A stretch of 64,000 bases of DNA, from positions 578,026,001 through 578,090,000 of the forward strand of contig NC_067400.1 of NCBI RefSeq assembly GCF_016432865.1, in the 5' to 3' direction. Source of the DNA: Antechinus flavipes. Taxonomy: Eukaryota. Numbering within the stretch: the first letter of the stretch is position 1; each line of letters starts with the position of its first letter. Position numbers and translations under genes: made by a program. The notes below the pieces were generated by a model. That model did no database searches and was not told the DNA's origin. It saw only the letters and a list, made by a program, of their open reading frames with translations. Below are positions 4,106 to 22,954 of the stretch, piece after piece.

Positions 4106-5166
4106 CCTTATGGGGTTTGTTTCTTCTGTTTATGGGGCCCTTTGCACCATCCACACTGTTTGTGGAGGCTGTCCTATACCAGATATACATGTATTAACAT
4201 GAATGCTTATAGGAAATCAGAGACCACGGCCCCTCCTTCTTACCACTAATGTGTGTGGAAACTTAAGACATGAGCTCTAACCAGAGTAAACTCAAGGGGA
4301 ATAAAAGACTATGAACTTTGGGGATCTTTTGCCCCTCACCCCATCCGCATGATCACTAGTGTCTGAGGCAGAAGTTGAACTCGGATCTTTCCAATTTCAA
4401 ATCCTGCACCTACCCACAATAAGTTCAAAACTTTCTAACCCAGTAATCCCAAGTGATGGGCTTTCCCTTTGGAAATCTACAGGCCGCCTGACTCCTGTGT
4501 CCCTTGTGGGACACATTGGGCTCCCGAGGTCTCTTCTCCAAGCCTGAGGTTCTGTGATCTTGGGGTATCGGGCCCTGCTTCCTCTGGTTGTAGATCATCA
4601 GGCAGAGGAACGGGAGTAAATATTTTAATGCGTTGAAATGCAGCCATTCTAGAAAGTGAGGTACGCCTGTGCCAGCTGGGCAGGGCGGGGGGAGGGCTGA
4701 CCCCTGCGGCTGTCTCCATGACCAGAAGAGGGGCTCAGGTCCCTCGGCCCCTCTCCGTCCAAGCCCGTTACCGCCTCTGGGCTCTCTCATCTTCCTCCTT
4801 GGGTAACAAGAGGAGCTCTCCCACGACACGAGGCTCTCTCCCCCTCCTCGGACAATTCTGGCAGCATGTGGGGGCTCTGAGTGTAAGCAAATAGGCTGGA
4901 CCATTGGGGGGCGCGAGGGAGGGAGAAAAGGAGAAGGGGTTCAGCTGAGGTCTGTGAAGCAGGAAACAGACGTGTCATCGGCCCAGCAGCCTGGGGGTCA
5001 AGAAACTGGGGGCGGAGGCGGTGATGGCTTCTATTCAGACCCCAGTGAGGACCCTGCCCTGGACAAAGCTGGGCGGAGTGGGGGAGCTCAGAAGTCTGGT
5101 GGTAGGTAGATAATTCTACTTACTGAGGGGTTGGGAACTCCCTGGGTCAGAGACCCATCCCCAGAG

Positions 5167-5406
5167 TCAAAGGTCGGGGGGTCTTGGGCACAGGGGGTCA
5201 GGAGGCGGGTGCTCTTTGGAGTCACAAGCAGCACTGTCCGCAGGTTTAGAGGTGGAGGGACAGAGGGGGCCTTCGGCCCCAGCCCAGCCCCCAGGCCTGT
5301 CTGAGTACAGCTCCTGGTTTTTCTCTTTCCACCTCCGAAACTTCTCAGAAGTCAGTGTGGGGTCATTCAGCACCTCATCCAGGACCTGCAGCTCCTGGAG
5401 CTTTGC
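5167..5406 (-). CDS. CNKSR1: CNKSR1 coding exon 21 (coiled coil, stop)
   Basis: AKLQELQVLDEVLNDPTLTSEKFRRWKEKNQELYS...RPPDL*; 240 nt. Confidence 0.95.
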   Translation of the reverse strand, partial: AKLQELQVLDEVLNDPTLTSEKFRRWKEKNQELYSDRPGGWAGAEGPLCPSTSKPADSAACDSKEHPPPDPLCPRPPDL

Positions 5407-8400
5407 CTGGAGACCAAGGGGACAGGGAGCACAGGGGCTAAGCACTGGCATCCCCCCACCCCCCCAGCCCCCAATGTGGGGATTCTCCTTCCCCTCCTTT
5501 CCAAAACCACGGCCACGGCGAGGGCTGACCTTGAGCGTGCTCTGCAGACATCGCACGTGATGGGCCCGCTCGTTGAGCTGGGGGTCCCGGGCACGGCGCA
5601 GGAAGGAGCTGCGACACTGCTCCTGGGTCAAGAACTGTGGGCGGCCCAGCAGGGACACCCCTCCCTGTAGCAGGCCCCGCACCAGGTGCTCCAGGGCTCC
5701 GTCACTGCTGCTGTCTGAGGCGGGGGTACACAGGATGCAGGATCAGGTCCCTGGGGCCCGCCCGCCCCCACCCTGCCTCCAACCCCACCCCTTTAGCCCC
5801 TCCAGACAGTCCCCACGTCCCCCTCCCCCAAGCACCCAGCGCTCTCCGTTGTCCGGGGATACCTGTCAAAGGGCTGTGGGCCACCTGGGGGCTGCCTTGC
5901 GGGGGGGTGGCCGACGGGGAGGCTTCTCCATGGGGAGAGCTCCAGACTCCCCCAGGGCTGGGCTGAGAGAGGAAACAGGGTTAGGCCAGCCTTCTGGGAG
6001 GAGACCTCCCCCCGCACCCAGCCTGGACACTCACCGAGGCGGGCCGGGACCCTGCTTCCTCATCTGGATCTTCGGCTTCGGTTTCGCTGTAGCAGTCTGG
6101 GGGGGAGAGGAAGGGGCAGCGTGAGGCTCGGGGGGCTGGGGGCTCTGGGCTGCCCTTTCTTGTGTGATCCAGGGGAGGGCAGGGATGTGTGGGGAGGGGC
6201 CAGTTCCTCTCCGGAGAGGGGTCCCCCACTCTGGAGCTCAGGGAAGAAAAGGGCCAGTCCCTCGGAAGCCACCCTCACCTTCCTCTCTGGGCGCAGGCCC
6301 TCGGCTGTGGGACTGGTACTTGGAAATGCAGGTCACCAGGCGGCTCACCCACCTGCCAAAAAGGGAGGGGGGTCATGGGCAGAGGGGAGGGCAGGTGGGC
6401 AAGGGGGCACGAAGGGAGAACGTCAGCACAAAAGGGAGGGAAGGGGAGAGAATTGTTTCCCTCACTGAGTGGAGAGGGGAAGGGTTGAGAAAAGGGGGGA
6501 AGAAGGATGGCACAGAAACAGGGATGAGGGTGGCAATGGGGTGCAGATGGGAATGAGGAGGGAGCGCAAAGGAATAGCAATCAACTCCTCACATGCTCAA
6601 GTCAGCCAGGGTTTCTGCGGCGAAGATGAAAGGCTTGTACAAGTTATGGGTGAGCTGGAACACACTGGGGGACAGGGAGGAAGGACAAGGTCATTCCCAG
6701 AGCAGTTCCTGACCCAGAAACCCTGAAAGGCCATTATTCTCCCCAACACAGTAACACTTGCCAGTCTGAACCCCCATCTGCTCCCCAAGTGTGCCCCAAT
6801 TCCCCATCCCAAATCCGATCCCACTCTCCACCTCCTCTCCCAGGCTGACCCGAGCCTCCCACACGGCCCTCACTCACTATTTCTTCTTCTGGTCTCGGCC
6901 ACTCTCCAGGCTGTAGTTGGAGACATTGATGAGCCCTTCAGCCTTCTCGTCCTGGGGAACAGATTCAGGAAGGGACAAGACTCTGAGACCGCTCCCCTGA
7001 GGTGGGAGAATCCCCCCAGGGACCCCCAGGTTTGGAGCAGGGAGGAAGGGAGGGAGATGGTCAGGAAGGGAGGGCCTGTGCCCCAAGGAAGAGACAGAAG
7101 CATGGAGAAGAGAGCCGATGGGCAGAGGGGACTGAGCAGAGGCGGGCAGAAGGACAGACAGACACGCAGAGGAGGGCAGGGAACGCGCCTCCCAGAGGGC
7201 AGAGGGGCAGGGCAGGGGCGGGCAGAAGGACAGACAGAGGAGGGCAGGCAGGTGGGCAGAAGGGCTGAGCAGGGGCAGGCAGAAGGACAGACAGACAGAC
7301 AGAGGAGGGCAGGGAACGCACCTCCCAGAGGGCAGAGGGGCAGGGCAGGGGCGGGCAGAAGGACAGACAGACAGAGGAGGGCAGGCAGGTGGACAGAGGG
7401 TGAAGGCCCTGGCTGGGCCAGGCTGGGGCAGACACTGGGATGCCCTCAGGCCTGGGGCCTCCTGCGTCACTCCCCCGGAGCCTCACCTGAGGCTGTCGGT
7501 ACCAGTAGAGCGTGTGGCCCTTGAGCACCATCCAGCACCGGCGCCAGCGGGGGCCCATGAAGCCCCCGGGCGCCTTCCGAAGCAGCAGCCACCCGTCGCA
7601 GTCCGGCTGGCCCAGCTGCCGGCACGACACCCGCCTGCGGCTCAGCCGCGTCGCCACCCCTGTGGGGGACAAGGGTAGGAAAACCACGTCCTTCTCCGGC
7701 CCCTTCCCTCCGCTCTGCCCCAAACCCACGTTCCCAGGTCACGGGGGGAGGAGCATCAGAACAGAAAGGGACATTTCATTATCGTTCCTCAGTCTCGTCC
7801 GACGGTCCATGACCTCTCTGGGGTTTCCTTGGCAGGGTTACTGGAAGGGTTTGCCATTTCCTTCTCCAGCTCATTTGGCAGATGGGGAAACTGAGGCAGA
7901 CCGGATGAAGGTGTCTGAGGCTGAATTTAAACCAAGACCTCCCTGACTCCAGGCCTGGAGCTCGATGCACCATCGTGTCATTTAGCTGCCCTTAGACATC
8001 ACCGAGTCCAACTTCCCTCATTTTTACAGAAGAGAGAGGAATCAGAGAGGGCAAGGGGCTTACCCAAGAACACACAGCAAAGCTATACCCTTATGTCCCC
8101 CAGGCGTCCCCCACCTGATCCCTAATGTCTAACAGCCCAGGTACCTTTGGCTTTGGACTTCTTGGGGCTGCAGGAAGGACCCTGGGGGCACAAAAATCAA
8201 AAAAATCTTAAGACACCTTGGAGGTTCTCCAGACAGCACATGCCGGATGTGACCATCCAGCCTCTGACAAGGGCCTTTAGTGACAGGGGACCCTTGACCC
8301 TCTGGAGAAACCCATCCTACCCTTGGAGACCTTTAATAAGGTTTTCTCCTATTTGAGCAAAACTCTTTCCCTGCAGCTCCCCCCACACTGCCTTGGGGGG

Positions 8401-11400
8401 CTGAGGAGAATGAGCCCTGTCCCCCTTCAAAGGGCCCAGGAAAGCTGCCATCTCCTCTAAGTCCTCCCCAATCCTGCATCCAGCTGTCATCCCACCTCGC
8501 CCCGAGCCCGGCCCCATCCTAATTCTCAGCTTCTAGATTCATGTCTAGAACGGGGGAAGGGAGAAGGCCGGACCTGGGGGCTCCCCTCTGCTCCCAGCCT
8601 ACCTTGTCCGGGGGCTCCGGCGATCCGTGACCCGCAATTTCCCCCATGACTGGCTGGGCTGCTGGAGGGGGGTCTGGGGCGCTGGGGGAGCGGCGTGCCT
8701 CGTCAGAGCCCCAGCTAGTGCCACAGTCTGAAGGTGCGGTCGGGCCTAGGAAGACAGCAGCCTTCTCAACACATGCCAAGTTCTGGGCCCATGGAGAACC
8801 CGGCATGGAGGGATGTCTCGGAAGAGGCTTTGGGCTGAGAAGGAGCAGGGGACCCAGATGTTCTGGGCTATCTGTGCTGATAACAGTGCTCCTCTGGTGT
8901 GACCGGGCTGGCTGGGGCAAAGCAGTGGTCTCTGGTGGGGGGGGGGGGGGGGGGGAGGGCTGAGTGCCAGGGGACTTACTGAAGTGCTCAAGACAGATTT
9001 AAATAATGCTGAAATTGGAGGAACTGAAAAGAGCCTTAGATTATGGAACATTAGAGCTTAGAACCAGGATGTCAGAGCTGGGAGGGCCCTTAGAACCCAG
9101 GAGGTCAGAGCTGGGAGGGCCCTTAGAACCCGGGATGTCAGAGCTGGGAGGGCCCTTAGAACCCGGGATGTCAGAGCTGGGAGGGCCCTTAGAACCCGGG
9201 AGGTCAGAGCTGGGAGGGCCCTTAGAACCCGGGAGGTCAGAGCTGGGAGGGCCCTTAGAACCCAGGAGGTCAGAGCTGGGAGGGCCCTTAGAACCCAGGA
9301 TGTCGAGGTGGGAGGGCCCTTAGAACCCGGGAGGTCAGAGCTGGGAGGGCCCTTAGAACCCAGGATGTCGAGGTGGGAGGGCCCTTAGAACCCGGGATGT
9401 CAGAGCTGGGAGGGCCCTTAGAACCCGGGATGTCAGAGCTGGGAGGGCCCTTAGAACCCGGGAGTCAGAGCTGGGAGGGCCCTTAGAACCCGGGAGGTCA
9501 GAGCTGGGAGGGCCCTTAGAACCCGGGAGGTCAGAGCTGGGAGGGCCCTTAGAACCCGGGATGTCAGAGCTGGGAGGGCCGTTAGAACCCAGGAGGTCAG
9601 AGCTGGGAGGGCCCTTAGAACCCAGGAGGTCAGAGCTGGGAGGGCCCTTAGGACCCAGAGTTCTAGAACCTGATATACTCTTAGAATCCTGTTAGTTGAA
9701 ATAGAATATCAGGACTAAAAGTGACCTTGAAGATCATCTAATCCAAATACCAGAGGAAAAAAGTAGACCTTTGTTTTTCTCCTACTAAAGCCTAGAAAAA
9801 GGAAGGGACTGGTCAGGTTCCCACAGCTGGCCACAACAGAACCAGTATTAGAACCCCAAAATTCCCAACCCAGTATTCTTTCCCTGACCTCACATTACCT
9901 GCCTCGGAGGAGCTGGGGACTCTTGGTTCTGGACTCTGGTCAAAGGCGAAGGTAGAACCATTTTCTTCTGAGGCTCTGTAGAGAACAGAGATCGCAGGGA
10001 CAAAGCGGTCACCCCTCCCCACGTGCCATCCCCAAGCCACGACGCACTCTGCTGGGAGAGTCCGTTACCTTGGAGAGGGGGGCGCCGAGGCTGCTGATTG
10101 GTTCCTGGAGCTGGTGATTGGTTCCAAGGGGCTCTGAGGAATAAGTAGGGGGGAATCATGAGCGAGGCACAGGAGGAAGGAGAGCAGAGACGGGGAGGGG
10201 GAGGAACCCACCTGAGGGGCAGACTTGGGCACAGGAACAGTCTTCAGCATCAGTCTGAGCAGGGCGGGGTCCTGGAGCAGCAGCCTGTCCAAGCTGGCCC
10301 GGGGCCAGCCCACCTCAAGGACCAAGGCAGGGGAGACAGACTTAATTTGGGACACTTGGCCTGAGCTGGGCCTGGGGCAGTGGCTGCCCTGAATCACCCC
10401 CACTTCCATGCCCACCGGTCCCCTGACATACAGGTGAGAGGCTCCTGCTCCCTTCTGTCTTCTCCCTTCCTCTAGCTAACACCCAACTCCCTAACTCCCT
10501 CCCCAGGCTCCCCTACAGGTAGATCTGTATCCAGGTGTCCACCCCAGGTACGCCCCCGCCACCTGTCCCTCCAGTCCAAGGACACCAACAGAACAGGCAC
10601 TGAGCTTCTACATGTAGGAGGGGTCCTCAGAAGGGGTGGGATCCCCATTTCCAGACCTGGGTCCCACTCCCCCTTCTCTCCCCAGTCAACAACGGTCTAA
10701 AGATGTCATTCCTTCCCTTCCGGGGACTCACCACCACCTGCCCGTTGACCTGAACGATCTCGTCTCCCAGCAAGATCTGGGAACAGCCGTCGGCAGGAGA
10801 CTGGAGGGCAGAGGGAGAGGGGAGGGGGTTGGGGAGGGGCAACTGAACTCCCCTCCCCTCCCCCCCCCCTCGGAGCCTCGATTGGCCGGAGCAGCTGCCG
10901 GGCCGGGAGGGCGGGAGGAACTTGCAGACAGGGATTAGAGGCAACATTCCTCCCCGGGGTGGAAGGATGGGGTGGACAGGACGAGGAGGCTCTTACCTCT
11001 GGGGCCGTTCCAGACACAAAGTGGTGGCAGCTGCTGGTGCTGAGGATTTCCAGGCCCTGGACAAACAGACACAGCCAGACACACAGGCCCGGGCTCCGTG
11101 AGGATGGGGAAGCGAGAAGCCGCAAGGAGCCTCCAGTCACAGGGCCTTACCCTGGGTGAGTCAGGCACTGGCTACCATGCCAGGAATGCAAAGTGGGGCA
11201 ACAGCTTCCAAGGAGTCGGGGGGAGGGCCCTTAGAACCCGGGAGGTCAGAGCTGGGAGGGGGGGAGGGGGGGAGAGACTCAAAGTCTAGTCCCAGCTCTT
11301 TCAAAATTAACTGTGTAATCTTGGGGAAATCATTTAGCTGACCTGGGGTTCAGTTTTGTTCTCTAAAAAAAGGAGAATGGTTTAGGGTATGAAGCAGCTA

Positions 11401-14400
11401 AATATCTGATCCCTAAAGTCTTTTACAGCTCTGACACCCTGGGTTCTAAGGGCCCTCCTAGCACTGACACCCTGGGTTCTAAGGACCCTCCCACCCCTGA
11501 CATTCTGGGTTCTAGATCCCTCCCAGCTCTGACACTGCTTCGGTTTTCCAACTCCCAGCAGGGTTCTCTAACTGTAGGATCCAGAATCTCAATAACTCAC
11601 ATTTAAATACAATTTTCAATCCATTGTGTCATGTGACACCACTGACACTCCTGTGAGGTTTGCAATACAAACATTATTATGCCCATTTAACAGAGGCACA
11701 AACTGATGCTCCGGTTAATCAACTTGCCGAAGACCCCAGAGGACGTGTCGGCAGGTCCTGGGGCTCCTCTCTCTCCTGGCCAAGACCAAGGGTGTACAAG
11801 GGGCTGGGACAGGCTCACCAGGGGCTCCTCTGGGTGTCGGGCTCGCAGCTCCACCAGCTCCAAGATGGCCAGCTGATCCAGCAGGTCCTCGGGACTGAAG
11901 CTCAGAATGGCGTCACAGATACTCACAATGTTGTCCCCCTGGGAACGTGGGAAGGCGTAGGGGAGACCCGGGGAGGGCAGAGGAGAGAGAGAGATGAGGG
12001 TGGCTGCTCAGCCCCTGCTGGGCCCCCCGCCCCAGCCCCCGCCCAGAGCACTCACGAGCCTCAGGAGCTGGGCTTCCTTCGTTGCCACGGGGGAGTCCTA
12101 AAAGAGACAAGAGAGCCGGTGGGCTCCCAGACCGAACGGGGGGCTCGCCTTTGGACGAGAAGTTTCCTCCCCGTCTCCCCCGGAAGGGTGGCCACGGCCG
12201 GAGGGGCCACTGCCCCCTTAAAGCCAGGTGGGCGCCAAGGCTCAGTTACCGCCGACTCTTCGCTCCAGCCTGGCCACTTTCTTCTTACCTGGGTACCCCA
12301 TCACACAGGATTATCCCCCGTTCTCTGCAGGGGCCCGCCCTAGAGGGCCGTGTCCCGGGGAAGGCCCGGCCCCCTTCTCAGGGGCCACACTGCTCTCACT
12401 CCCCCCCAAGGCCGGACAATTCCCGATTCCCAAATCCAAAGGGGATCCCCAGAGCCAGGCCTTCACAGGGTGGAAGTAAAGCCAGGATAGCAGGGGGGAA
12501 GGGGGAAAAGTCCCAGGACCCCCTGCTGTTCTTCCCTCAATTCATTCTGAGTGCCCGCTTTCACCTCCCAAAGAGGGGGCCGGGAGGGCTACACTCACAG
12601 CTCCCTCCCTTCCCCCCACCAAGCTCCAAGCCCAATCCACCCGTGGCCGAGATCCGAGAAAGTCAAGGTCACGAGGGGCGGGGGTGGGATAGCCGAGTCT
12701 CTGGCGGGGGGGGGCTGGCAAAGACTAGGGGGGCCCCAACTTCCCCCAACTCCAGATCTCTCTTCCAATGCTGGAGTGACCTACAGGCCCGTTCCCCTCC
12801 CCCAGTACCTGAAGCCTCGGGCCTTCCTCCCCTGTCCAGGCTGTCCGGCCCCCACCCAGGGTCCTGTCTGATTCACGGGTTATAAAAAGCATCGCTAGGA
12901 TCCGATTCCCGGCCCCACCCCGAGTGTCAGGCTGGGGGAGGTCACTCACCTCCTGCAGGGCCTGGGCCAGCTCCCTGCACAAATCCCCGACCTCCTGGCA
13001 CGCCGAAAAGTCATTGAGTTGGGAAAAAAGGTACCTGGGAGCCCGGGAAGGGAGAAAGACATTGAGACCCGGGTCGGGGCAAAGCGCGGAAATCCCCGTC
13101 TCCTCACCGGGGCGTCAGGGGCCCAGGGTCTGCCCGAGCCCAGCAGCCTCACAGCCCAAGCCCTTATCCTCCCCAGGAGGGTGTCCCCGGCTCGTAGCAG
13201 AGAGAGGCAAGGGGGCTAGAATCGCAACGGCAGAAATCGAGAGGCCGCTGTTTCAGGACTTGGCTCTGCGATCGATTCGCTGGATAAACTTTGGGTAAGC
13301 CACTTAACTGCCAGAAGCCTCAGTTTTCTGAGCTGCAAAATGGAGCCAATAATCCCTATTCCATCTAGGCCTTCTGAGGATTGCAGGGGATGCAGAACTG
13401 GTAAGAAGTCCAAGTGTTAGCGGCTGGGTGGAGCAGTGGATAGAGCCACTCCCCCCCCCCCCCCCCCCCCCCAGGTAGGAGGACCAGGATTCAAACGTGG
13501 CCTCGGACATTTAAAGAGTAAGTCACTTGACCCAATTGCCTCTCCCCCCACCCCAAAAAGGGAGAAAGAAGAACCCATTAGCCCCATTACCTGTTGAGCC
13601 AGCAGAGAAGGGCCCAAGCTGCTCGGACCAACTCGATGGCTCCCGTGAGTAGGTCTGGGGCAGGTTCCCCACAGGGCCCGAGGCAGCCCGGGACAAGACT
13701 GCAGAATTTGTGGGTCAGGGTCCGCAGCTGCTCTGTTAGTTTCCGGAGATTTTCAGTCTCTAGGCCGGAGCTCTGTGGCCAGGGGAGGAACACAACAGGT
13801 CACTCCCCACCCCAGGACCACATTCCCCTGGGTCCCATCCTCCCAAGGGGAAGAATGGATTGGGAGGGAGGGGCCAAACCCCCAACTCTGCTCTTTCTCT
13901 CGGTGTAACTTTAGGCCGCTAAGCGGCTCAGCGGGGAGAGCCCGGGGTCTGAAGTCAGGAACACCTGACTTCAACTTGCCCCTCAGACACTTCCTGGCTG
14001 TGCGACTGTGGCAAGTCGCCTAAATGGTTTTCCTTAATCTGTGGGAGCAGGAATGGCAAACCACTCCAGGGGACTTTTGCCAAGAAAGCTCCAGGGACGG
14101 TATGGCCCACGGGGTCACAGAGCTGGACACAACTGAACGATGACTAACTCGGGACAAGCCCCTCAACCTCTCTGTGCCTCAGTTTCCTCATCTGTAAAAT
14201 GGGAGGGCTGGCCCCGATAAATTCCAAAGTCCCTTCCAGGTCCAGGTCCACAAATCCGCGGGCCTCTGGCCCAGTGGAACCCCCAGGTTCTAGGCGCGGC
14301 TCCACCATACATTCTCGGCAGCATCTTGGATAAGTCAGTCACTCCCCTGGAAGGAGAAGGGCCTTCCAGGAGATGTGGACTCATTGTGCCCAGCACCTAC

Positions 14401-17400
14401 TCACCAGAGTCCGGAGCTGTTCCACCCCATCTAGGATGAGTTCCTGATGGCCAACGTGCCAGACCCCCAGGGCCTCCAGGCTCCGAGGACAGAGCTGAAG
14501 CAGGTCACTGCCCACTAGGGCCCACTGCTCAAAAGGGTGTTCTTGTACCAGCTCATCCAGGCCTGCAGGATGAGAGAGCCGGCACGGCATGAGTTACCCA
14601 ACCACCTCCCCTGGCCACGGCCGGGCGGGCTGTCCCAGGCGAGCCCTAGACCCCTTCTGAGCTAGGTTTCCTCGTGCTTCCAGACCCCCGAATAGCAGAA
14701 GACCTTCAGGCTCTCTCATCAGTCCTTGGCCCTCAAGCATCCCTGGGAAACCCAACTTTCATGGTGTAGACATAGACCAAAAGACATCCACCACATGGAT
14801 CTGGAAGTGAGGAATCTTCAAATTCTTACTAACTGTGATGCTGGGCAAGTCACTTAGCTTCAGCCTCAGTTTCCTCATTTGTAAAATAGAGGTGATTATA
14901 GTGCCATCTCCCAAATTTATAGTGAGGATCAACGAGATAATTGTCGATCGCTTAGCATGTCACCTGGCACACAATAGGTGCTAAATAAATGTTAGCTATT
15001 ATTATTATTATTATCAGGATCAAATGGGACAACATATATATGGTGCTTTGCAAAATGTTAAGGAAAAAAGAAGTCCTGGATTTAAGACTGTGCAAATTAC
15101 CGATCTGTTCTGGCCCTGGTTTTCCATCTGCAAAGTGAGAAAGCTAGCCTAGCTAAACTTTAAGGGCCCTCCCAGCTCTGATAGCTAAGATCTCTCTAGC
15201 TCTGACTCCCTGGGTTCTAAGGGCCCTCCCAGCTCTGACCTCCTGGGTTCTAAGGGCCCTCCCAGCTCTGACTTTCTAGGTTCTAAGGGCCCTCCCAGCT
15301 CTGACCTCCTGGGTTCTAAGGGCCCTCCCAGCTCTGACATTCCCTGTTCTAAAGGCCTTCCCAGCTCTGACCTCCTGGGTTCTAAGGGCCCTCCTGGCTC
15401 TGACATCCTGGGTTCTAGGGGCCCTTCCGGCTCTGACCGCCTGAGTTCTAAAGGCCCTCCCAGCTCTGACATTCCCTGTTCTAAGGCCTCCTGGCTCTGA
15501 CATCCTGGGTTCTAAGGGCCCTCCTGGCTCTGACCTCCTGGGTTCTAAGGGCCCTCCTGGCTCTGATCTCCTGCCTTCTAAGGGTCCTCCTGCCTCTGAC
15601 ATCCTGGGTTCTAAGGGCCCCCCTGGCTCTGACCTCCTGGGTTCTAAGGGCCCTCCCGGCTCTGACCTCCGGTGTTCCAAGGACCCTCCCATTCACCCTT
15701 CATGCAGCTAGGTCACACTTCGATGCCTGCTTAAAGCTCCTTTATCTGGAAAGTTCTCCCTGTACCATGACCTCTGAAAATTCCTAGTTTCCTTTAAAGT
15801 CAAGCTTGAATGCTCCCTCTAATATGAGTTGTTTCCTGATGTGTTAGGTTCCACCCTTCTCACAGGGGATTACTTTCTATCCCCACCCCCATCAATTTAT
15901 CTTGTATTTTATAAGTACCTACTTGTGGCTATTATTATTATTAATCACTATTATGGCAGTTAAGTGGCCCCAGGGATAGAGCACTGGAAGTGGAGTCAGG
16001 AAGATTCATCAACTGGAGTTCAAATCCAGCCTCAGACATTTACTAGCTGTCCCTAATTTCATTTGCTTCAGCTTCCTCATCTATAAGATGACCTGGAGAA
16101 GAAAACACTCCAGTATCTTTGCCAAGAAAATCCCAAATGCGGTCATGTTAGATATGATTTAAACAGACCATATCGTGGCAGTATTATTTCCCTCCAGAGA
16201 GGCTGGGAGTATTCCATTCTTATCTTTGGGAACTCAGTAGGGGCTTTGTAAATGCATATTAATGGATCACATGAAAGGAACAGGAAGATGCAAAATCACA
16301 GCACTCAAAAGTTTCTCAAAATGTCAATTTGATCCAAAACAATCCCAATAGACTTTGAATAGAAAATGCTATCTGTCTCAGAAAAACAACTACGAGAGAT
16401 TGAATGTAAATTAACACATGCTACGTTCATTTTTTTCTGCTTTGTTTTTCTCTTTTCTTATTTTTCTCTCCCAACATGATTCATAAAGCAACGTAAATTA
16501 AAAATAAATAGTTAAAAAAATTAAGACAGTCTGTTAAGTATCTCTGACCTCCCCTATTAAAAGAGAAATCGGGATAAGACTGACGGTTAAATTTTAGCAT
16601 TCTGACCTTAGCAGAAGCTACAAAGCAGGGCTTACTTTATTGTTTCATTTTTTATTTTAACCTTTATTATGTATTATTTCATTATGTTTATAATCCAGGC
16701 AATAGAGAAAATGCTAATATTAAAATATACTATACAGGACAATACTATTAAAATGTTATATGATTTTTAAAAGTATTATCAAAATGCAACACTGGAGGAA
16801 GGGATTTGGGGGGGGCAAGGTTGTAGATTAGGCCATGATTGGTGGGGAATCCAAGAATCCCAGGGAATAATAATAGCTCCATCACAGAGATGACCCTCCT
16901 CCCCATAAGAAATCTGAGACAAATTATGTAGTAAGAATACCCTCCCCACTTTTGTCCATCTGCTGTTTTTCTGCAGAATCCTGAGGAGGAATAGCATGGA
17001 ACTATTTTTCACATCTCCTCCTTAGTGGGGTTGGGGATCAGGATTCCTGGGTTCTTCACAACAAGGTGAACCTCCTTATATAATCATATACACACATACA
17101 TACATAGGAGTTGAATCAAACTGAGACTTGCTGAAGACCTTAGCTTTAAAAGGGCAAGGTCCATTGTCTCCCAGGGCCATCCATCTCCAGTCCTCCTGAT
17201 CTTGCCACTGGACCCAGATGGCTCTGGAGGGGAAAGTGAGGTAGATGATCTTGCACAGCCCTCCCTCACTTAAATCCAATTCACTCAGATGTCATAATAT
17301 CATGATCCTCTTTGAGAATGAAGGACAAACAACATACATACATACACACACTCTTAATAATCTATTATAAATGGTTCTCCTTGAACTAGGAGTTCCATAT

Positions 17401-17671
17401 TTTCTCCTAACTTGCTTATTGTATAAGTTGCTTTTTCCTTCTGGATCCCAATTTCCTTCTCAGTAATACAAAGATTAGATCAAATCAGGGATTTCTAGCC
17501 GCTTTTTTTAGAGGGGGAAAGAGTTTAGGGGGGAATCATGGACTCTTTTGGGCAAACTGGTGAAGTCTTTGAACCCTTTCTCAGAAAAATGTTTTGTTTT
17601 TTTTAAACATATAAAATAAAAGAGCATGTAAAGGAAACCAGCTGTAGTAAAATATAACTACCAATATGTTT

Positions 17672-17706
<35 letters not shown>

Positions 17707-20235
17707 GGACAGGTGATCTAATCCAAACTCATTTTGCAGATGTGGAAACTGAGGTCCAGGGAGGTTAAGTGACTAACCTTACATACAGTCAAGAGAAGGA
17801 AAAAGCACTTATATAGCACCTACCAACATGCCAGATGACCCTACAAGATACATGCTATTCCCATTTGATAGTTGAAGAAATTGAGGCAAAATGACTTGCT
17901 CTGGGTCATTCAGTAAGGTATGTGAGGCTAAATCTGAATCCACGTCTTTCTGACTCCAGCACTAGTGCTCTATCCACTGAACCACCAGCTTGATGCCTTT
18001 AAGACAGTGAGCATCACTGGTAGGGGGCTTAAATCTCAGTCTTCAGTCTTCTAAGGTAGCAATCTTCCCAGTTTCTACATTCCTTTCTAGCATTATAGAA
18101 TGCTTAGTTTCTCTTAGATCCAGCTCCTCAGTTAGATCCCCATCAGCTTCTTTATCTCCCCACTTGTCTCCTTGGAGCTCTTTTCCCCTTCAATCCCATT
18201 TAACTTCTCTGAGATGTTGCTAGTTAATACCACACACATGAATGGAAAAAGAAATGACTCCAGTCTGTGTGTGACTTTAAGCAAATAAGTTCTTTCCTCT
18301 ATGGTTTACTCTATAAAACTATAGGGTTGGCTTAGGTGACCTATAATTTTCCTTCTAACTCCAAATGTATGACTCTGTGACCACTAAGCCTGCACAAAGG
18401 CTGTTTTTGTGGACCTTCCCAAAACCTGTTCCTGGTTCTCCTCCTCCAGGAAGCCTTTCCTGATTCACCCTAGCTGGTTTCTGTTCTCTACTTCCTCCTC
18501 ACTCTACTCAGCACTGGTTTCTAGAACTTTTTACATTTGGCAAAGTTTTATTTGTTGGGTTTTGTCCTGAGAATATCTTCCAGTTCAAACAGGGGCTCCC
18601 TCAGGACAGGAGCTTCCCTACAGGCCACTGCAGAGCATTTTCATCTAGGGTCCATGAACTTTTTCATTAAAAAAAAAAATGTTTTTATATAATTTCTTTC
18701 CTTTGCAATACTATGTATTTTATCTTATACAGTTAGAACCATGACTGAGAAGGGTTATAGTCTGACTTCAACTGATGAAAGGTCCGTGACAAAAAAAGAT
18801 TAGGGAGCGCTAGAAGCTTTTTCTTTAACCTTAATAATAGCAGCCACTAATAGCTAGTAACATTTTTATAGGGCTTTAAAAGTTTCAAAAGTACTTTCCC
18901 AATATTATCTCATTTTTATCCTCACAATAACCCTGGGAGATAGGTGCTATTATTTATTGCTATCTTACAATTAAGGAAACTGAGGCAGACTTGCTAAGAG
19001 GCCCACAGCTACTATGGGAAGCCAAAATTAAACTCGGGTCTTTTGGAGTCCAGGTGAAGCCCAATAGTGAATGGTATCCAAGATGATATGGGCAAATTGC
19101 CTGCTCTTTTTCCCACAGGCTCTGAGCTAGTTACTACCTTGCTTCTTGAGTCTCTCCACCTGAGAAATGGGTCTAATGATAGCCTCCTCCAGATCCCAGT
19201 GGCCTTTTGAAGATGAAGGAGATATGATTATATCTATTTATTATATTTATTATATAATCTATAATTATAGTTCAGCTTCCTTCAGCAAGCCCCAAGGGCA
19301 TATGGCAAGGAGAGTGGGAAACAGCTAGAATTCTGGGAAGTCTTAATCTAGGAGGCCCTGGGTCATTTAATCGATTAAATCAAAATAGGGAAGATTAAGC
19401 GTGTACCAGTGGGTAAACATCTCTGCCCTCAAGCAGCTTACCTTCCCCCATTCTGAAGGGACCGACCACAAGAACACAGCTGAATCCACATGTACGGATG
19501 AGAATAGCTACAAGGCACATTTCAGGCCGGGATAACAACACTTTCGGGGGATCGGGAAAGGCCTCCCGTAGGAGCTTTGCAGGAAATGAGGCAGAGTGCT
19601 ACCCTCTCAGTGCCTCAGTTACTTCATCTGCACAAACGGTCACAAAAACACCTCCGCTGCCTATCTCACTGGGTGGCTGGGAAGGAAACGCTCTGCAAAC
19701 TTTATATTGCTCTACGGATGAATGATTATTTCAGATGAATGTCTTGCTGTCTTTGTAAGAAGGGAACAGGTGAGGGGTGGGATGGGCCTGCAATCTGAAA
19801 CTGGAAGGACCCCAAGAAGAGGTCATAGCGTCCATCCCCGGCCTCCGAACAGGCTGAGGATGCTCTTTTGCCTTTAACACTCACTTCCCGGAGAGACCCC
19901 CTCTTCCCAGGGAGGGTTGTAGCTCAGAGTCCCGCAACCCACAACTTCAAGGCTTCCCACTTTGGGGACCTTAAAAGGTCGATGTAAAGCAGACACTTTC
20001 CACCAGGGTCAGAGTATATAACTTCCTTATCTAGGTCAGTGTGGACCAGGAACCCCCCCATTCTTTCCCCCCACCCCCACCCCGCCCAGATTCCTGGATT
20101 AGGATCAGGGCAGAGTCCTTCCTCTCTTCTCCCTCCACCCCTCAAAGACCCCACCTCCCAGCCCCGGGCACTCCCTTACCCACCTCTCAGCCACGCCACC
20201 ACCGCCCCAGGACCCCAGGACGCCACCGGCTCCAT
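5167..20235 (-). CDS. CNKSR1: Connector enhancer of kinase suppressor of Ras 1 (SAM-CRIC-PDZ-PH-coiled-coil scaffold), 21 coding exons, 2172 nt / 723 aa (717 aa if the 8727 acceptor is used)
   Basis: Hand-assembled join (complement): 20184-20235, 14405-14562, 13591-13772, 12950-13034, 12056-12097, 11819-11938, 10997-11056, 10732-10800, 10212-10313, 10069-10133, 9899-9975, 8603-8745, 8145-8181, 7487-7659, 6878-6951, 6593-6664, 6279-6352, 6035-6096, 5863-5962, 5530-5714, 5167-5406. All introns are GT-AG with consistent phases. Peptides match recalled human CNK1, e.g. MEPV..W, DCDGWLLLRKAPGGFMGPRWRR, DEKAEGLINVSNYSLESG, CYSETEAEDPD and terminal RPPDL*. Confidence 0.95.
5530..5714 (-). CDS. CNKSR1: CNKSR1 coding exon 20
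   Basis: DSSSDGALEHLVRGLLQGGVSLLG...DPQLNERAHHVRCLQSTLK; cag|...|gtcagc; 185 nt. Confidence 0.95.
5863..5962 (-). CDS. CNKSR1: CNKSR1 coding exon 19
   Basis: PSPGGVWSSPHGEASPSATPPQGSPQVAHSPLT-D; ctctcag|...|gtatcc; 100 nt. Confidence 0.9.
6035..6096 (-). CDS. CNKSR1: CNKSR1 coding exon 18
   Basis: DCYSETEAEDPDEEAGSRPAS; cag|...|gtgagt; 62 nt. Confidence 0.95.
6279..6352 (-). CDS. CNKSR1: CNKSR1 coding exon 17
   Basis: MWVSRLVTCISKYQSHSRGPAPREE-D; cag|...|gtgagg; 74 nt. Confidence 0.95.
6593..6664 (-). CDS. CNKSR1: CNKSR1 coding exon 16 (PH)
   Basis: YVFQLTHNLYKPFIFAAETLADLS-M; cag|...|gtgagg; 72 nt. Confidence 0.96.
6878..6951 (-). CDS. CNKSR1: CNKSR1 coding exon 15 (PH)
   Basis: DEKAEGLINVSNYSLESGRDQKKK-Y; cag|...|gtgagt; 74 nt. 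Confidence 0.96.
7121..7395. repeat. Tandem duplication (about 2 x 135 bp) of GA/GC-rich subunits, CNKSR1 intron 14
   Basis: Two near-identical copies of ...gaggagggcagggaacgc(g/a)cctcccagagggcagaggggcagggcaggggcgggcagaaggacagacag... Confidence 0.85.
7487..7659 (-). CDS. CNKSR1: CNKSR1 coding exon 14 (PH domain)
   Basis: GVATRLSRRRVSCRQLGQPDCDGWLLLRKAPGGFMGPRWRRCWMVLKGHTLYWYRQPQ; 173 nt. Confidence 0.97.
7775..7945 (-). mobile_element. Marsupial CORE-SINE (Mar1-type)
   Basis: Reverse complement of ggagaaggaaatggcaaacc...ccagtaaccctgccaagg tail plus CORE cagtttccccatctg. Confidence 0.65.
8145..8181 (-). CDS. CNKSR1: CNKSR1 coding exon 13
   Basis: GPSCSPKKSKAK-G; gcccccag|...|gtacct; 37 nt; corresponds to human SPVGRKKSK-G. 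Confidence 0.8.
8603..8745 (-). CDS. CNKSR1: CNKSR1 coding exon 12 (5' boundary 8745 or 8727)
   Basis: ...DCGTSWGSDEARRSPSAPDPPPAAQPVMGEIAGHGSPEPPDK|gtaggc; two in-frame phase-1 acceptors (cctag| at 8745, ttcag| at 8727). Confidence 0.75.
9057..9658 (+). repeat. 33-bp minisatellite array A (about 18 units), CNKSR1 intron 11
   Basis: Unit TCAGAGCTGGGAGGGCCCTTAGAACCCRGGAKG; translates as the SELGGPLEPGR repeat in the ORF track. Confidence 0.97.
9899..9975 (-). CDS. CNKSR1: CNKSR1 coding exon 11
   Basis: RASEENGSTFAFDQSPEPRVPSSSEA-G; ctacag|...|gtaatg; 77 nt. Confidence 0.87.
10069..10133 (-). CDS. CNKSR1: CNKSR1 coding exon 10
   Basis: SPLEPITSSRNQSAASAPPSPR; cctcag|...|gtaacg; 65 nt; phase fits neighbours. 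Confidence 0.85.
10212..10313 (-). CDS. CNKSR1: CNKSR1 coding exon 9 (PDZ end)
   Basis: VGWPRASLDRLLLQDPALLRLMLKTVPVPKSAPQ; unusual GAG| acceptor; donor gtgggt; 102 nt. Confidence 0.85.
10732..10800 (-). CDS. CNKSR1: CNKSR1 coding exon 8 (PDZ)
   Basis: SPADGCSQILLGDEIVQVNGQVV; cag|...|gtgagt; 69 nt. Confidence 0.93.
10997..11056 (-). CDS. CNKSR1: CNKSR1 coding exon 7 (PDZ)
   Basis: GLEILSTSSCHHFVSGTAPE; cag|...|gtaaga; 60 nt. Confidence 0.93.
11221..11535. repeat. Short copies of the 33-bp unit in both orientations, CNKSR1 intron 6
   Basis: A-orientation copy at 11221-11260; about 3 degenerate B-orientation units at 11425-11535 after a MIR-like fragment. Confidence 0.9.
11819..11938 (-). 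CDS. CNKSR1: CNKSR1 coding exon 6
   Basis: GDNIVSICDAILSFSPEDLLDQLAILELVELRARHPEEPL; cag|...|gtgagc; 120 nt. Confidence 0.9.
12056..12097 (-). CDS. CNKSR1: CNKSR1 coding exon 5
   Basis: DSPVATKEAQLLRL; ttttag|...|gtgagt; 42 nt. Confidence 0.88.
12950..13034 (-). CDS. CNKSR1: CNKSR1 coding exon 4
   Basis: RYLFSQLNDFSACQEVGDLCRELAQALQE; cag|...|gtgagt; 85 nt. Confidence 0.95.
13591..13772 (-). CDS. CNKSR1: CNKSR1 coding exon 3 (CRIC domain)
   Basis: SSGLETENLRKLTEQL...AIELVRAAWALLCWLNR; cag|...|gtaatg; 182 nt. Confidence 0.95.
13940..14150 (+). mobile_element. Marsupial CORE-SINE (Mar1-type)
   Basis: tRNA-like head, then gaatggcaaaccactccag...ttgccaagaaa...ggacacaactgaac tail. Confidence 0.7.
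14405..14562 (-). CDS. CNKSR1: CNKSR1 coding exon 2 (SAM domain)
   Basis: GLDELVQEHPFEQWALVGSDLLQLCPRSLEALGVWHVGHQELILDGVEQLRTL; cag|...|gtgagt; 158 nt. Confidence 0.95.
15161..15690 (-). repeat. 33-bp minisatellite array B (about 16 units), inverted relative to A, CNKSR1 intron 1
   Basis: Unit CTCTGACCTCCTGGGTTCTAAGGGCCCTCCCAG is the reverse complement of the A unit; starts at the 3' end of a MIR-like fragment. Confidence 0.97.
15955..16170 (+). mobile_element. Marsupial CORE-SINE (Mar1-type)
   Basis: ggagtcaggaagattc...ttcaaatccagcctcagac head, CORE, and ctccagtatctttgccaagaaaatcccaaat tail. Confidence 0.7.
17484..17665 (-). mobile_element. hAT-Charlie (Charlie4z-like) MITE remnant
   Basis: catggactc...tggtgaagtc...ttctcagaa..aatgttt core, shared with copies at about 2680-2950, 18640-18812, 45465-45660 and 49668-49860. 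Confidence 0.55.
17673..17703. repeat. (AC)n microsatellite
   Basis: Directly visible. Confidence 0.95.
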
Positions 20236-20560
20236 TGCGAATCCCGGACTGTCCAGCTCAGAAAATTTCCGGCCCAGAAAGCCAGCGTCCTACCCAGGGT
20301 TAGGGGCGGGCGGGGCTGAGCGAGGGGCGGGTCTGAGTAAGGGGCGGGGCAAGCCACATACCTGAGCCCACGTGGCCGGGCCAGGTGAACATCCCTGCAC
20401 ACCTATTGGTCCGGCCGCCCGCTCTTCAGCCCGAAGAGCCGCCCCTTACTCAGCCCCACCCCACTCCCAACTCTAGCCTCGGGGGGCGGACGCGGTGGCG
20501 TCCAACTGATCTCGCGCTTGCGGAGCCTTTGGACTCCGGACCCCTCCGCTCCGTATTTGC
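20150..20560 (-). promoter_or_regulatory. CNKSR1 CpG-rich promoter
   Basis: High CpG density; repeated GGGGCGG GC boxes at about 20302-20350; CCAAT on - strand (attgg, about 20405); surrounds coding exon 1. Confidence 0.75.
20184..20235 (-). CDS. CNKSR1: CNKSR1 coding exon 1
   Basis: MEPVASWGPGAVVAWLR-G; ATG in context gcaATGg; donor GTGGGT; 52 nt. Confidence 0.92.
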
Positions 20561-21361
20561 CCCGCTCCCCTCCATGGACTGCTGCTCCTGGACAGAGTGA
20601 GGGTGGGACGCAGAGAAGGGGTCACCGACCCCCCTAAAATAACTCCTTTGCCTTACAAAACCCCTTACAATTTCGCATGATTTCACACTAAGCCTAAGGA
20701 GGAGGAAATTGAGGGTCCGCTAAGAGAAAGCCTTGGCCTTGGGTCGAAAGGCCAATTAAGTAACAGAGGAGGAGGCAGCTTAGTGCTGACCACTACCCAT
20801 GGGGAGCCCAGACAAGGGGAGCCGCCACACTCCACCGAGACCTGACCAGACTAAACCAAATCCAGAACCAGGGCCTGGAGAGTGTGAGTGTCACGGGGCT
20901 GGGAGAGAGTCCCCGTCCTCCTCCCCCTCCCCCACCAATCCCAGCCAAAGCCAAAGCCAGTCCCCTAAAGGTCAATCGAGATCAGGAGCCTAATTAATCA
21001 AGCCCCAAGCATCTCTTGAATGCCTGCTATGTGGCAGGCTGGAGGAGGTGGTGATTGAAGAGCTGCTTTGGAATCAGGAAAGTCTATCCCAAGTGTCATC
21101 TCTGACACACACAGGCTGTGGCCCTGGGAAGTCACTCAGGGTGGCCAGGCTACTCCCTGAGACCTGTAAAATGCAAGGGGCTCCACAGAAGGGGTGAGGT
21201 TCCCTATTACAGCAAGGAAATCACAGATGGACTGGGAACAAAAGTGGTCCCCAAACCCCAGAAACCCTGACAAAAATGAAACCAGTCCCATTCACCAATG
21301 GGGCACCTTATCAATGGCACATCTGTCAAGGCTGAAGTTCTTAATCTGGAGTGTGTGTGTG

Positions 21362-21525
21362 NNNNNNNNNNNNNNNNNNNNNNNNNNNNNNNNNNNNNNN
21401 NNNNNNNNNNNNNNNNNNNNNNNNNNNNNNNNNNNNNNNNNNNNNNNNNNNNNNNNNNNNNNNNNNNNNNNNNNNNNNNNNNNNNNNNNNNNNNNNNNNN
21501 NNNNNNNNNNNNNNNNNNNNNNNNN
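21362..21525. other. Assembly gap (164 N) at a TG repeat
   Basis: Run of N. Confidence 1.
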
Positions 21526-22954
21526 GTATGTATTATTTCAGAAATGGTTTCCTATGTAATTCTAGTTTAGGCTTTAATACACATTCTGGTTCTCTAGGAT
21601 GTCCAGGATTCACAAAAAGGCTAAGATTGCCCAGATAGGATGACAAACAACCAACATGGCCCCAGAGAAGTAGCTAACAGCTATGTGGAGCCCTGAGCTT
21701 CTGAGTTCAAATTATACTTTATTCTGATGGCCTTGTCTATAAAAGGGGAGAGAGGAGGAATTGGTCTATATGGCTTATATACAAATACATATACACATAC
21801 AGGATTATAAATACATATACAGAATTTCATATACCAAATATGGGTGGGGGGGAGACGAGTAAGAACTCTTTTCAAGGAGTGGACACTTGAGCTGGGCCTT
21901 GAAAAAAAACAACTTTTTCAAGAACTCCTGTTGTTCCCTGCCTTGGCACCAGGGGTTACAGATGGACCAAAAAAAAAAAAAAAACTTTGGGATTTTGATC
22001 AAGGAAAGACTGTCAAAAGATACCAACCTCTGACCCCTGGCAAATGATGTTGCTTTTGGGGGTCCCAGTTTTCTCCTTCATAGAATAGGTATGTTTTTGT
22101 AATCCTATAGAATGGGACAAATGTTTCAAGCAGCTTTCTAAACTTAAAAGTGTAACACAAGTAGAACTATAAACTCACCAGGACCAAAAAGGGAATTTCC
22201 TCTGCTCTCCAAAGCTAGGGCTGTTCTGTATTACCAACCTAGTTGGGAAAGAATTCAACATTTATTAAGGGAGAGGGATTGTGATTTAAAGAGTGCCATA
22301 TGGAGTCGAGGGACCTGAGTTCAACTACTTAGGGGACAGTTGGCAAGGATCTTCTCTGGCATTATTTTCTTTTTTGTAAAATGAGACTGAATTAAACAAA
22401 TTTGAAAGTCAGCCAACGCACATTTACTATGTGCCAGGAATTGTACTAAATGCTAGAGTTAGAAAGGCAAAAGATAAAAACAAAAAAACTACTCTCATAG
22501 TGCTAGTTTTTAAATAGCTTACATGGTAACAAAAGAGACAACATAAAAGATAAATATGGAATAGATGGAAAGTAATTTGAAAAGGTACAGCATTAGCATT
22601 TAGGGGAATCAGGACAGGCTCTGAGAGGTGAATTTTGGGCTGAGCCATGATCGAAGCCAGAGGAGCCAAGAGGTAGAAGTGAGGGGGCAGAGCATACCAG
22701 GCGTGGAAGTAGGGGGAAAAGGGGCGCAGCAATGCAAAGGCCAAGAGGGAACGTGGAATAGTGTACAAGAGCTACAACCAGGATCTGTAGTGAGGAGAGA
22801 AGGGGAAAATGAAGGTGTAAGAAAGCTGGAAAGGGAAAGAGCCCCAAGTTATGGGGCTTTATATTTGATCCTGGAAGTAAGAGGGAGCCACTGGAGCTCA
22901 CTGGTGAGGTGGAGTTGAATACAGTAAGAACTTTGCTTTAGAAAAATGCTGGGA

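What the first reader, a model, noticed from the sequence alone, without database searches (positions are those of the whole stretch)
9057..15690. Two inverted arrays of the same 33-bp minisatellite bracket CNKSR1 exons 2-11
Seen: array A (9057-9658, about 18 units, intron 11) and array B (15161-15690, about 16 units, intron 1) are reverse complements, and many units are identical. A ends about 240 nt from the exon-11 donor; B starts about 600 nt from the exon-2 acceptor. Established: reverse-complementary intronic repeats flanking an exon block promote back-splicing (circRNA), multi-exon skipping and ADAR editing, usually via SINE pairs. Inference: a ~500-bp pre-mRNA duplex able to form in many registers could loop out exons 2-11. 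This would be a tandem-repeat-driven, copy-number-tunable splicing switch in a Ras/Rho scaffold gene. At the DNA level the pair could also promote inversion of the 5.5-kb segment.
Basis: partly seen in the sequence, partly recalled or inferred. Interest (0 to 1): 0.82.

Follow-up and report, generated by a model that had tools for sequence, protein, structure and literature searches.

The report
Inverted SINE-tail minisatellites flanking CNKSR1 exons
Two opposite-facing 33-bp repeat arrays in introns 1 and 11 of the antechinus CNKSR1 gene are real, but they are the overgrown tails of an ancient inverted pair of MIR-type SINEs, so any circular-RNA or exon-skipping effect would be the familiar inverted-SINE mechanism and is untested.

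Summary
Array A (9057-9656, 18.3 units) and array B (15198-15691, 15 units) share one 33-bp unit in opposite orientation. They lie 241 nt and about 600 nt from the outer splice sites of CNKSR1 exons 2-11 (960 nt, phase 1 in and out). The window is Antechinus flavipes.

The arrays are not a new kind of element.
- Each array, and two small extra copies in intron 6 (C at 11426-11535, D at 11230-11262), continues the 3' tail of a decayed MIR-type SINE.
- All four elements sit at orthologous sites with the same orientations in Tasmanian devil, dunnart and koala.
- Copy numbers differ by lineage. A is 18/19/6/3, B is 15/11/5/2 and C is 3/4/53/2.5 (antechinus/devil/dunnart/koala).

The predicted B:A RNA duplex grows from 67 bp in koala to 477 bp in antechinus (-988 kcal/mol). 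Back-splicing, in-frame skipping and A-to-I editing are plausible by analogy with inverted MIR and Alu pairs. No RNA evidence exists, and nothing indicates a regulated switch.

Earlier scan notes (s1-181892, s1-192143, s1-183220) report the same 33-bp MIR3-tail arrays elsewhere in this genome, including another exon-bracketing inverted pair. I did not check those notes. The case therefore looks like one member of a genome-wide family.

The parts
9057..9656 (-). Array A. It has 18.3 units of 33 bp in intron 11. The SINE-sense (C-rich) unit is on the gene strand. The array ends 241 nt downstream of the exon 11 donor and 311 nt upstream of the exon 12 acceptor.
   Evidence: TRF; unit list; orthologous arrays in the devil (18.7 copies), dunnart (6.1) and koala (3.3).
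9633..9741 (-). Decayed SINE body and tail that leads into array A.
   Evidence: nhmmer with a profile built from 4 non-array SINE copies of the window: model positions 171-271, E 0.013. The orthologous hit is stronger in the dunnart (E 1.3e-6) and present in koala (E 3e-4).
15161..15691 (+). Array B. It has 15 units of 33 bp in intron 1. The SINE is antisense to the gene, so the pre-mRNA carries the G-rich complement. The low end is about 600 nt from the exon 2 acceptor.
   Evidence: TRF; unit list. The irregular 57-bp first unit and the last unit are shared with the devil and dunnart.
15109..15160 (+). SINE body remnant that leads into array B.
   Evidence: nhmmer model positions 139-257 at 15109-15253, E 4.3e-6; the koala orthologue gives E 1.9e-11.
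11273..11535 (+). Element C in intron 6: a SINE body (11273-11425) plus 3.4 tail units (11426-11535), in the same orientation as B.
   Evidence: TRF; nhmmer model positions 71-282, E 1.8e-6. The orthologue is expanded to 52.6 units in the dunnart.
11230..11262 (-). Element D in intron 6: a single unit in A orientation, 164 nt from C. The two can form a local 27-bp hairpin.
   Evidence: The last unit is orthologous in the dunnart and koala. C x D duplex is -46.7 kcal/mol.
9899..14562 (-). CNKSR1 exons 2-11. The exons are 14562-14405, 13772-13591, 13034-12950, 12097-12056, 11938-11819, 11056-10997, 10800-10732, 10313-10212, 10133-10069 and 9975-9899. They total 960 nt and encode residues 19-338 (SAM, CRIC, PDZ). 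The block enters and leaves in phase 1.
   Evidence: Splice sites read; tblastn of the annotated Antechinus CNKSR1 protein; Pfam.
20184..20235 (-). Coding part of exon 1 (ATG at 20235). Intron 1 spans 20183-14563 (5621 nt).
8603..8745 (-). Exon 12. Intron 11 spans 9898-8746 (1153 nt).
   Evidence: The annotated protein corrected my first guess of an acceptor at 8931.

Best explanation
Origin (shown). Four MIR-type CORE-SINEs inserted into CNKSR1 introns before the koala-dasyurid split. Two are antisense to the gene (B in intron 1, C in intron 6) and two are sense (D in intron 6, A in intron 11). The tail looks like the MIR3/THER2 type with a CR1-like end; that name comes from memory and was not checked. 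The SINE tail natively carries 2-4 copies of a 33-bp unit. This tail behaved as a minisatellite and expanded by lineage. A and B grew to 11-19 units in the antechinus and devil lineage, and C grew to 53 units in the dunnart. The opposite orientation of A and B is an accident of how the SINEs inserted.

Consequence (inferred). The antechinus pre-mRNA can pair intron 1 with intron 11 over about 480 bp, in many registers, close to the exon 2 acceptor and the exon 11 donor. By the established inverted-repeat mechanism, shown experimentally for Alu and MIR pairs, this should favour three outcomes:
- some back-splicing of exons 2-11 into a 960-nt circle;
- some in-frame skipping from exon 1 to exon 12;
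- ADAR hyper-editing of the duplex.

My estimates are about 40-50% for a detectable circle or editing, and under 10% for a selected, copy-number-tuned switch.
For: - Arrays and duplex.
- SINE origin: each array follows the motif TTTCCTCATCTGTAAAATG and a tail resembling other SINE copies in the window. A profile built only from non-array copies hits C, B and the A flank in the correct orientation, with its tail positions running into the arrays. The same holds in koala and the dunnart.
- Independent insertions: the flanks of A, B, C and D share no homology with one another (z about 0).
- Orthology and copy numbers.
- Array-specific diagnostic base: A has CCCGGG and B has CCTGGG in both antechinus and devil. 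The expansion therefore predates their split, across which the non-array part of the locus aligns at 85.8% identity.
- Duplex series: koala 67 bp, dunnart 175 bp, devil 374 bp, antechinus 477 bp.
- Mechanism precedent: inverted MIRs are required for ciRS-7, circCDK8 and circSPNS1. Pairing stability and about 200 nt of MIR length matter (PMC7371899). Species-specific SINE dimers flank circRNAs in the opossum (PMC8516420).
Against: - No RNA data exist. I found no dasyurid circRNA study and no CNKSR1 circRNA report beyond a human database listing.
- In five mammals, circRNA parental genes tend to be GC-poor. This locus is 52-62% GC across the bracket, and the introns inside the bracket are short.
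- Intron 1 can be removed before array A is transcribed 5.5 kb later.
- C can compete with B for A (-206 kcal/mol).
- The SINE family name could not be checked against Repbase or Dfam.
Confidence: 0.8

Rival explanations
1. The inverted arrays are a functional, copy-number-tunable splicing switch that controls how much full-length CNKSR1 is made relative to a circle or a form lacking SAM, CRIC and PDZ.
For: The duplex is strong and proximal. The block is in frame at 960 nt. Both A and B are kept expanded in two dasyurine genera even though the rest of the locus aligns at only 85.8% identity.
Against: The layout is explained by descent. Copy numbers drift widely between species: A is 18/19/6/3, B is 15/11/5/2 and C is 3/4/53/2.5. 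In the dunnart the favoured partner of A shifts to C. The order of unit variants is scrambled between antechinus and devil, as expected for neutral turnover. No RNA evidence exists. Unchecked scan notes report similar 33-bp arrays elsewhere in the genome.
Confidence: 0.08
2. The arrays are inert at the RNA level. Co-transcriptional removal of intron 1 and helicase or ADAR activity prevent any productive B:A pairing, so the arrays are just neutral intronic minisatellites.
For: The gene is GC-rich and compact inside the bracket, unlike typical circRNA hosts. Arrays B and A are 5.5 kb apart. The annotated isoforms X1 and X2 show no skipping of exons 2-11.
Against: Inverted MIR pairs with far weaker pairing are sufficient and necessary for several circRNAs. 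The arrays lie within 250-640 nt of the relevant splice sites.
Confidence: 0.4
3. The arrays act through proteins rather than pairing. B gives the pre-mRNA about 15 G-run units (GGGAGGG, an hnRNP F/H-type intronic enhancer motif). A gives about 18 C-rich units (CCCUCCC, a PCBP/hnRNP K-type motif), each with a CUGAC branch-point-like motif and a CAG. These could modulate or act as decoys for splicing of exons 2 and 12.
For: The unit sequences are read directly. The motif assignments come from general knowledge and were not tested.
Against: No binding or splicing data exist. The motifs are inherited from the SINE tail and are present in every species whatever the copy number.
Confidence: 0.08
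4. One array is an assembly artefact, such as an inverted duplicate of the other.
For: Long tandem arrays are hard to assemble.
Against: A and B have different variant spectra and different diagnostic bases. Their flanks are unique, and each has its own SINE body. Orthologous arrays occur at the same sites in three independent assemblies of other species.
Confidence: 0.01

Closest known systems
Inverted MIR pairs that drive back-splicing (ciRS-7/CDR1as, circCDK8, circSPNS1; Yoshimoto et al. 2020, PMC7371899)
   Same: The repeats are MIR-family SINEs in opposite orientation, in the sequences flanking the circularised exons and within 3 kb of the splice sites. In that system, pairing stability and length determine efficiency.
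   Different: Here the pairing surface is not the SINE body. It is a tandemly amplified 33-bp tail, which gives about 480 bp of multi-register pairing instead of about 200 nt in a single register. The block has 10 exons. No circle has been observed.
Species-specific young SINE dimers (Alu, B1/ID, opossum SINE1) flanking circRNA exons (Gruhl et al. 2021, PMC8516420)
   Same: Lineage-specific gain of reverse-complementary intronic sequence is proposed to create circRNA potential.
   Different: The gain here comes from minisatellite expansion of old insertions, not from new insertions. The host gene is GC-rich and compact, unlike the typical parental genes in that study.
Minisatellites derived from transposable elements (Ahmed and Liang 2012, PMC3389668)
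   Same: The tandem array is seeded by an internal or terminal repeat of a retrotransposon and expanded in place.
   Different: The repeats form an inverted pair of such arrays in one gene, conserved in position across marsupial orders.
Large inverted repeats flanking the mouse Sry exon that yield circular Sry RNA (from general knowledge, not checked here)
   Same: Long non-SINE-body inverted repeats bracket the circularised sequence.
   Different: The Sry arms are tens of kilobases of unique inverted duplication, not tandem arrays.

Membership tests
Intronic inverted-repeat (reverse-complementary match) pair promoting back-splicing | Two homologous repeats in opposite orientation, one in each intron flanking the exon block. 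| tested here: met
   A is in intron 11 and B is in intron 1, as reverse complements; exon model.
Intronic inverted-repeat (reverse-complementary match) pair promoting back-splicing | The repeats lie close to the back-spliced sites (within about 3 kb in the MIR study). | tested here: met
   A is 241 nt from the exon 11 donor. B is 598-635 nt from the exon 2 acceptor.
Intronic inverted-repeat (reverse-complementary match) pair promoting back-splicing | Pairing across the block is stable and stronger than pairing within either flanking intron. | tested here: met
   B x A is -988.5 kcal/mol with 477 bp. The window holds no further copy of the unit outside 9057-15691. All 25 of the longest inverted pairs in 4000-21000 are A:B registers. 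C offers partial competition at -206 kcal/mol.
Intronic inverted-repeat (reverse-complementary match) pair promoting back-splicing | An RNase R-resistant back-splice junction is observed. | not testable with these tools
   No RNA reads were available and no literature was found.
Intronic inverted-repeat (reverse-complementary match) pair promoting back-splicing | The circle is lost when either repeat is deleted or flipped. | not testable with these tools
   This needs a minigene or CRISPR experiment.
Minisatellite derived from the 3' tail of a MIR-type CORE-SINE | The array is contiguous with a SINE body in the same orientation, and the unit is homologous to the SINE tail. | tested here: met
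   nhmmer with a profile from non-array copies gives C at E 1.8e-6, B at 4.3e-6 and A at 0.013. In koala, B gives 1.9e-11 and D gives 5.5e-6; in the dunnart, A gives 1.3e-6.
Minisatellite derived from the 3' tail of a MIR-type CORE-SINE | A low-copy ancestral state is found at the orthologous site in an outgroup. | tested here: met
   Koala has 2.4, 2.5, 4.4 and 3.3 units at the B, C, D and A sites.
Minisatellite derived from the 3' tail of a MIR-type CORE-SINE | The flanks match a curated consensus (Repbase or Dfam MIR3/THER2 or Mar1). | not testable with these tools
   No repeat library was available. The family name rests on memory, and on an unchecked scan note (s1-181892) that reached the same reading.
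Hypervariable minisatellite (VNTR) | Copy number varies between individuals. | not testable with these tools
   Only one assembly per species was available. Between species the range is 2 to 53 units.
CNKSR1 (connector enhancer of KSR 1) | Domain order SAM, CRIC, PDZ, PH, and orthology to annotated CNKSR1. | tested here: met
   Pfam. Most coding exons are 100% identical to Antechinus flavipes CNKSR1 isoform X1. The locus DNA is 100% identical to GCA_016432865.2 chromosome CM028219.1.

The most novel reading that the evidence does not exclude
Expansion of MIR3-type SINE tails in the antechinus and devil lineage turned a weak ancestral inverted pair (67 bp in koala) into a 370-480-bp duplex. This switched on an abundant 960-nt, stop-free CNKSR1 circle, or an in-frame isoform lacking SAM, CRIC and PDZ, with array length setting the circular-to-linear ratio. 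The same 33-bp arrays are reported elsewhere in this genome, including around SLC9A1 exons. Such runaway SINE tails would then be the dasyurid counterpart of primate Alu pairs as the main source of circRNA-promoting complementarity.
Probability: 0.12. Interest if true: 0.6.

Novelty: new variant of a known kind. Interest (0 to 1): 0.33.

Why it matters
If the duplex does act, four living marsupials form a natural length series at one locus. Predicted pairing is 67, 175, 374 and 477 bp, and the dunnart offers an alternative partner. That would allow a direct test of how inverted-repeat length and register multiplicity set back-splicing efficiency. It would also show that minisatellite expansion, and not only new SINE insertion, can create circRNA potential. 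As it stands, the finding is an ordinary by-product of repeat evolution in an intron, and the host gene carries no evidence of altered products.

Tried and rejected
- Repeat elsewhere: I searched the 5.8-billion-protein collection with the translated repeat ORF to find other genomic copies. The result was blank and says little.
- Flank similarity: plain blastn of the array flanks against the window was too insensitive. I replaced it with local alignment against shuffles and an nhmmer profile.
- Opossum circRNAs: the catalogue of Gruhl et al. lists Ensembl gene ids without names and the stored file was cut, so CNKSR1 could not be looked up. The window is not opossum anyway.
Two isoform look-ups returned nothing.
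- Exon 12 acceptor: my first guess of 8931, behind the long C-run, was wrong. The annotated protein places it at 8745.
- Gene conversion between A and B: I tested for ongoing exchange. Within-species A-B unit distances are not smaller than between-species ones (3.83 against 3.41, and 4.60 against 4.99). A and B also keep array-specific diagnostic bases in both antechinus and devil. Recent exchange is therefore rejected. The dasyurid-wide spread of the CCTCC variant across arrays remains a weak hint of older exchange.
- Segmental or inverted duplication as the origin: rejected, because the flanks share no homology.
- Known RNA families: Rfam finds none in 8500-16500.


Full report
**Observation**

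Tandem Repeats Finder reports a 33-bp array at 9057-9656 (18.3 copies, 95% matches). It reports a second array at 15198-15691 (15.0 copies, 84% matches) whose consensus is the reverse complement of the first (sequences).

A 25-nt core of the unit occurs 32 times in the 64-kb window with up to 3 mismatches, against 0 expected from shuffles. All matches lie between 9073 and 15664. The 25 longest inverted repeats in 4000-21000 are all A:B registers, up to 259 nt at 88% and 214 nt at 93% complementarity.

Two smaller copies lie inside the bracket. C is at 11426-11535 (3.4 units, B orientation) and D is at 11230-11262 (one unit, A orientation).

**Gene and species**

The minus strand carries SAM, CRIC_ras_sig, PDZ and PH matches in that order. 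A 61-residue PH exon retrieved a 724-residue protein. A search with that protein listed seven marsupial CNKSR1 proteins.

The Antechinus flavipes protein matches the window's exons at 100%. Its locus, from GCA_016432865.2 chromosome CM028219.1, is 100% identical to window 3167-22235 outside the masked run. I did not read the masked run.

Reading the splice sites and checking them against the annotated protein gives this model:
- Exon 1 ends at 20184.
- Exons 2-11 span 14562 to 9899 and total 960 nt.
- The block enters and leaves in phase 1, which agrees with scan note s1-193740.
- Exon 12 starts at 8745.

B ends 598-635 nt upstream of the exon 2 acceptor. A starts 241 nt downstream of the exon 11 donor and occupies 52% of the 1153-nt intron 11.

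**What the repeat is**

In the orientation of B, each of A, B, C and D is preceded by sequence resembling a MIR-type SINE. That sequence contains the motif TTTCCTCATCTGTAAAATG, of which the window holds 15 copies against 0.03 expected. The tail of this SINE resembles the 33-bp unit.

I built a profile from four SINE copies elsewhere in the window. It hits C (model 71-282, E 1.8e-6), B (139-257, E 4.3e-6) and the A flank (171-271, E 0.013). Each hit is in the right orientation, with the tail positions running into the arrays.

The flanks of the four elements share no similarity with one another (z about 0). They are therefore independent insertions and not a segmental or inverted duplication.

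The ATTCTGTG motif in the koala units suggests a CR1-like, MIR3/THER2-type end. That name rests on memory and could not be checked against a repeat library. An unchecked scan note (s1-181892) reached the same reading for other arrays in this genome. Seeding of minisatellites by transposable elements is a described phenomenon (PMC3389668).

**Comparative anatomy**

I fetched the orthologous CNKSR1 loci of Sarcophilus harrisii (L004), Sminthopsis crassicaudata (L003) and Phascolarctos cinereus (L002). All four elements are at the same intronic positions with the same orientations.

Boundary units mark the orthology:
- The irregular 57-bp first unit of B is shared among the three dasyurids.
- The last unit of B is shared with koala as well.
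- The last unit of D is shared by antechinus, the dunnart and koala.

Copy numbers from Tandem Repeats Finder:

| Element | Antechinus | Devil | Dunnart | Koala |
|---|---|---|---|---|
| B | 15.0 | 11.0 | 5.0 | 2.4 |
| C | 3.4 | 4.4 | 52.6 | 2.5 |
| A | 18.3 | 18.7 | 6.1 | 3.3 |

D stays at about 1-2 units in antechinus and the dunnart and has 4.4 in koala. It was not scored in the devil.

SINE bodies next to the arrays are also detected in koala and the dunnart.

The consensus of A carries CCCGGG and that of B carries CCTGGG in both antechinus and devil. The expansion of A and B therefore predates the split of these two genera. Across that split, the non-array part of the locus aligns at 85.8% identity.

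The order of unit variants is not conserved between the two species. This indicates turnover within the arrays. Unit distances give no sign of recent exchange between A and B.

**RNA pairing**

In isolation, B pairs with A at -988.5 kcal/mol. Cofolding gives 477 intermolecular pairs and a gain of about -552 kcal/mol over the two self-folds.

| Species | B x A duplex | kcal/mol | C x A, kcal/mol |
|---|---|---|---|
| Koala | 67 bp | -113 | -113 |
| Dunnart | 175 bp | -335 | -471 |
| Devil | 374 bp | -801 | -259 |
| Antechinus | 477 bp | -988 | -206 |

In the dunnart, C x A is stronger than B x A, which favours a loop of exons 7-11. In antechinus, C x A is much weaker than B x A, and C and D can form a 27-bp local hairpin.

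**Mechanism and its standing**

It is established that inverted MIRs are necessary for the circular RNAs ciRS-7, circCDK8 and circSPNS1. Efficiency rises with pairing stability and needs roughly 200 nt of MIR (PMC7371899). It is also established that lineage-specific SINE dimers flank circRNA exons in the opossum and eutherians (PMC8516420).

By that logic the antechinus and devil arrays meet every sequence-level requirement for promoting back-splicing of exons 2-11, in-frame skipping, and ADAR editing.

Several points argue against a strong effect:
- This locus is GC-rich (52-62% across the bracket), whereas circRNA parental genes tend to be GC-poor.
- The introns inside the bracket are short.
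- Intron 1 may be spliced out before A is transcribed.
- The two annotated isoforms show no skipping of exons 2-11. Isoform X2 instead starts in intron 4.

I found no circRNA data for dasyurids. For CNKSR1 I found only a listing of the human gene in a database-derived table.

**Verdict**

However, the elements are an ancient inverted SINE pair with expanded tails, and their layout is inherited rather than evidently selected. Their copy numbers drift between species, and no product has been seen.

Other scan notes report the same 33-bp arrays elsewhere in this genome, including an inverted pair around SLC9A1 exons 3-4 (s1-192143) and a 3.1-kb array (s1-183220). I could not check these notes. 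They suggest that the CNKSR1 case is one instance of a genome-wide family.

The most useful outcome is the four-species series of duplex lengths at one locus, which makes the dependence of back-splicing on repeat length directly testable.

Noticed in passing
L003:10157-11887 (Sminthopsis crassicaudata CNKSR1 intron 6): The orthologue of the small element C is a 1.73-kb array of 52.6 units (91% matches), and 19 of the units are identical. It is the largest array of this family seen here. It is inverted relative to A, so in the dunnart the favoured loop would be exons 7-11.
   Followed up: partly
window 9057-9656 and 15161-15691, read on the minus strand: In the pre-mRNA, each unit of A carries CUGAC (a branch-point-like motif), then a C-rich tract, then CAG about 27 nt later, which resembles a 3' splice site. 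Each unit of B carries GAG|GUCAGA, a weak donor-like motif, plus GGGAGGG runs. The arrays could act as splice-site decoys or protein-binding platforms. This was not scored with a splice-site model.
   Followed up: no
window about 12728-12900, minus strand (intron 4): The annotated Antechinus CNKSR1 isoform X2 (592 aa) begins with 27 residues encoded in intron 4 and joins at exon 5. It is an alternative 5' end that lacks SAM and CRIC and is unrelated to the arrays.
   Followed up: partly
window 27004-27486: An unrelated 36-bp C-rich minisatellite (13.4 copies, 96% matches) lies about 600 bp downstream of the first coding exon of ZNF593, which is at 28048-28245 on the minus strand.
   Followed up: no
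window 7119-7397: A 133-bp tandem duplication (2.1 copies, 91% matches), rich in GGCAGA and ACAGAC, lies in the CNKSR1 intron just downstream of the PH-domain exon (7487-7660).
   Followed up: no
window 8937-8956: A run of about 20 G on the plus strand (C in the pre-mRNA) lies in intron 11 between array A and exon 12. It is followed by an AG that I first mistook for the exon 12 acceptor.
   Followed up: partly
window 34578-34929: A (GT)21 run is followed directly by an imperfect (AG)154 tract of about 300 bp.
   Followed up: no
arrays A, B, C and D across species (L001, L003, L004, L002): The unit variant GACCTCC is shared by non-orthologous arrays in all three dasyurids. Koala units carry GACATCC or GACATTC instead. 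This is either a parallel single-base change or old exchange between arrays. Recent A-B exchange was tested and not found.
   Followed up: partly
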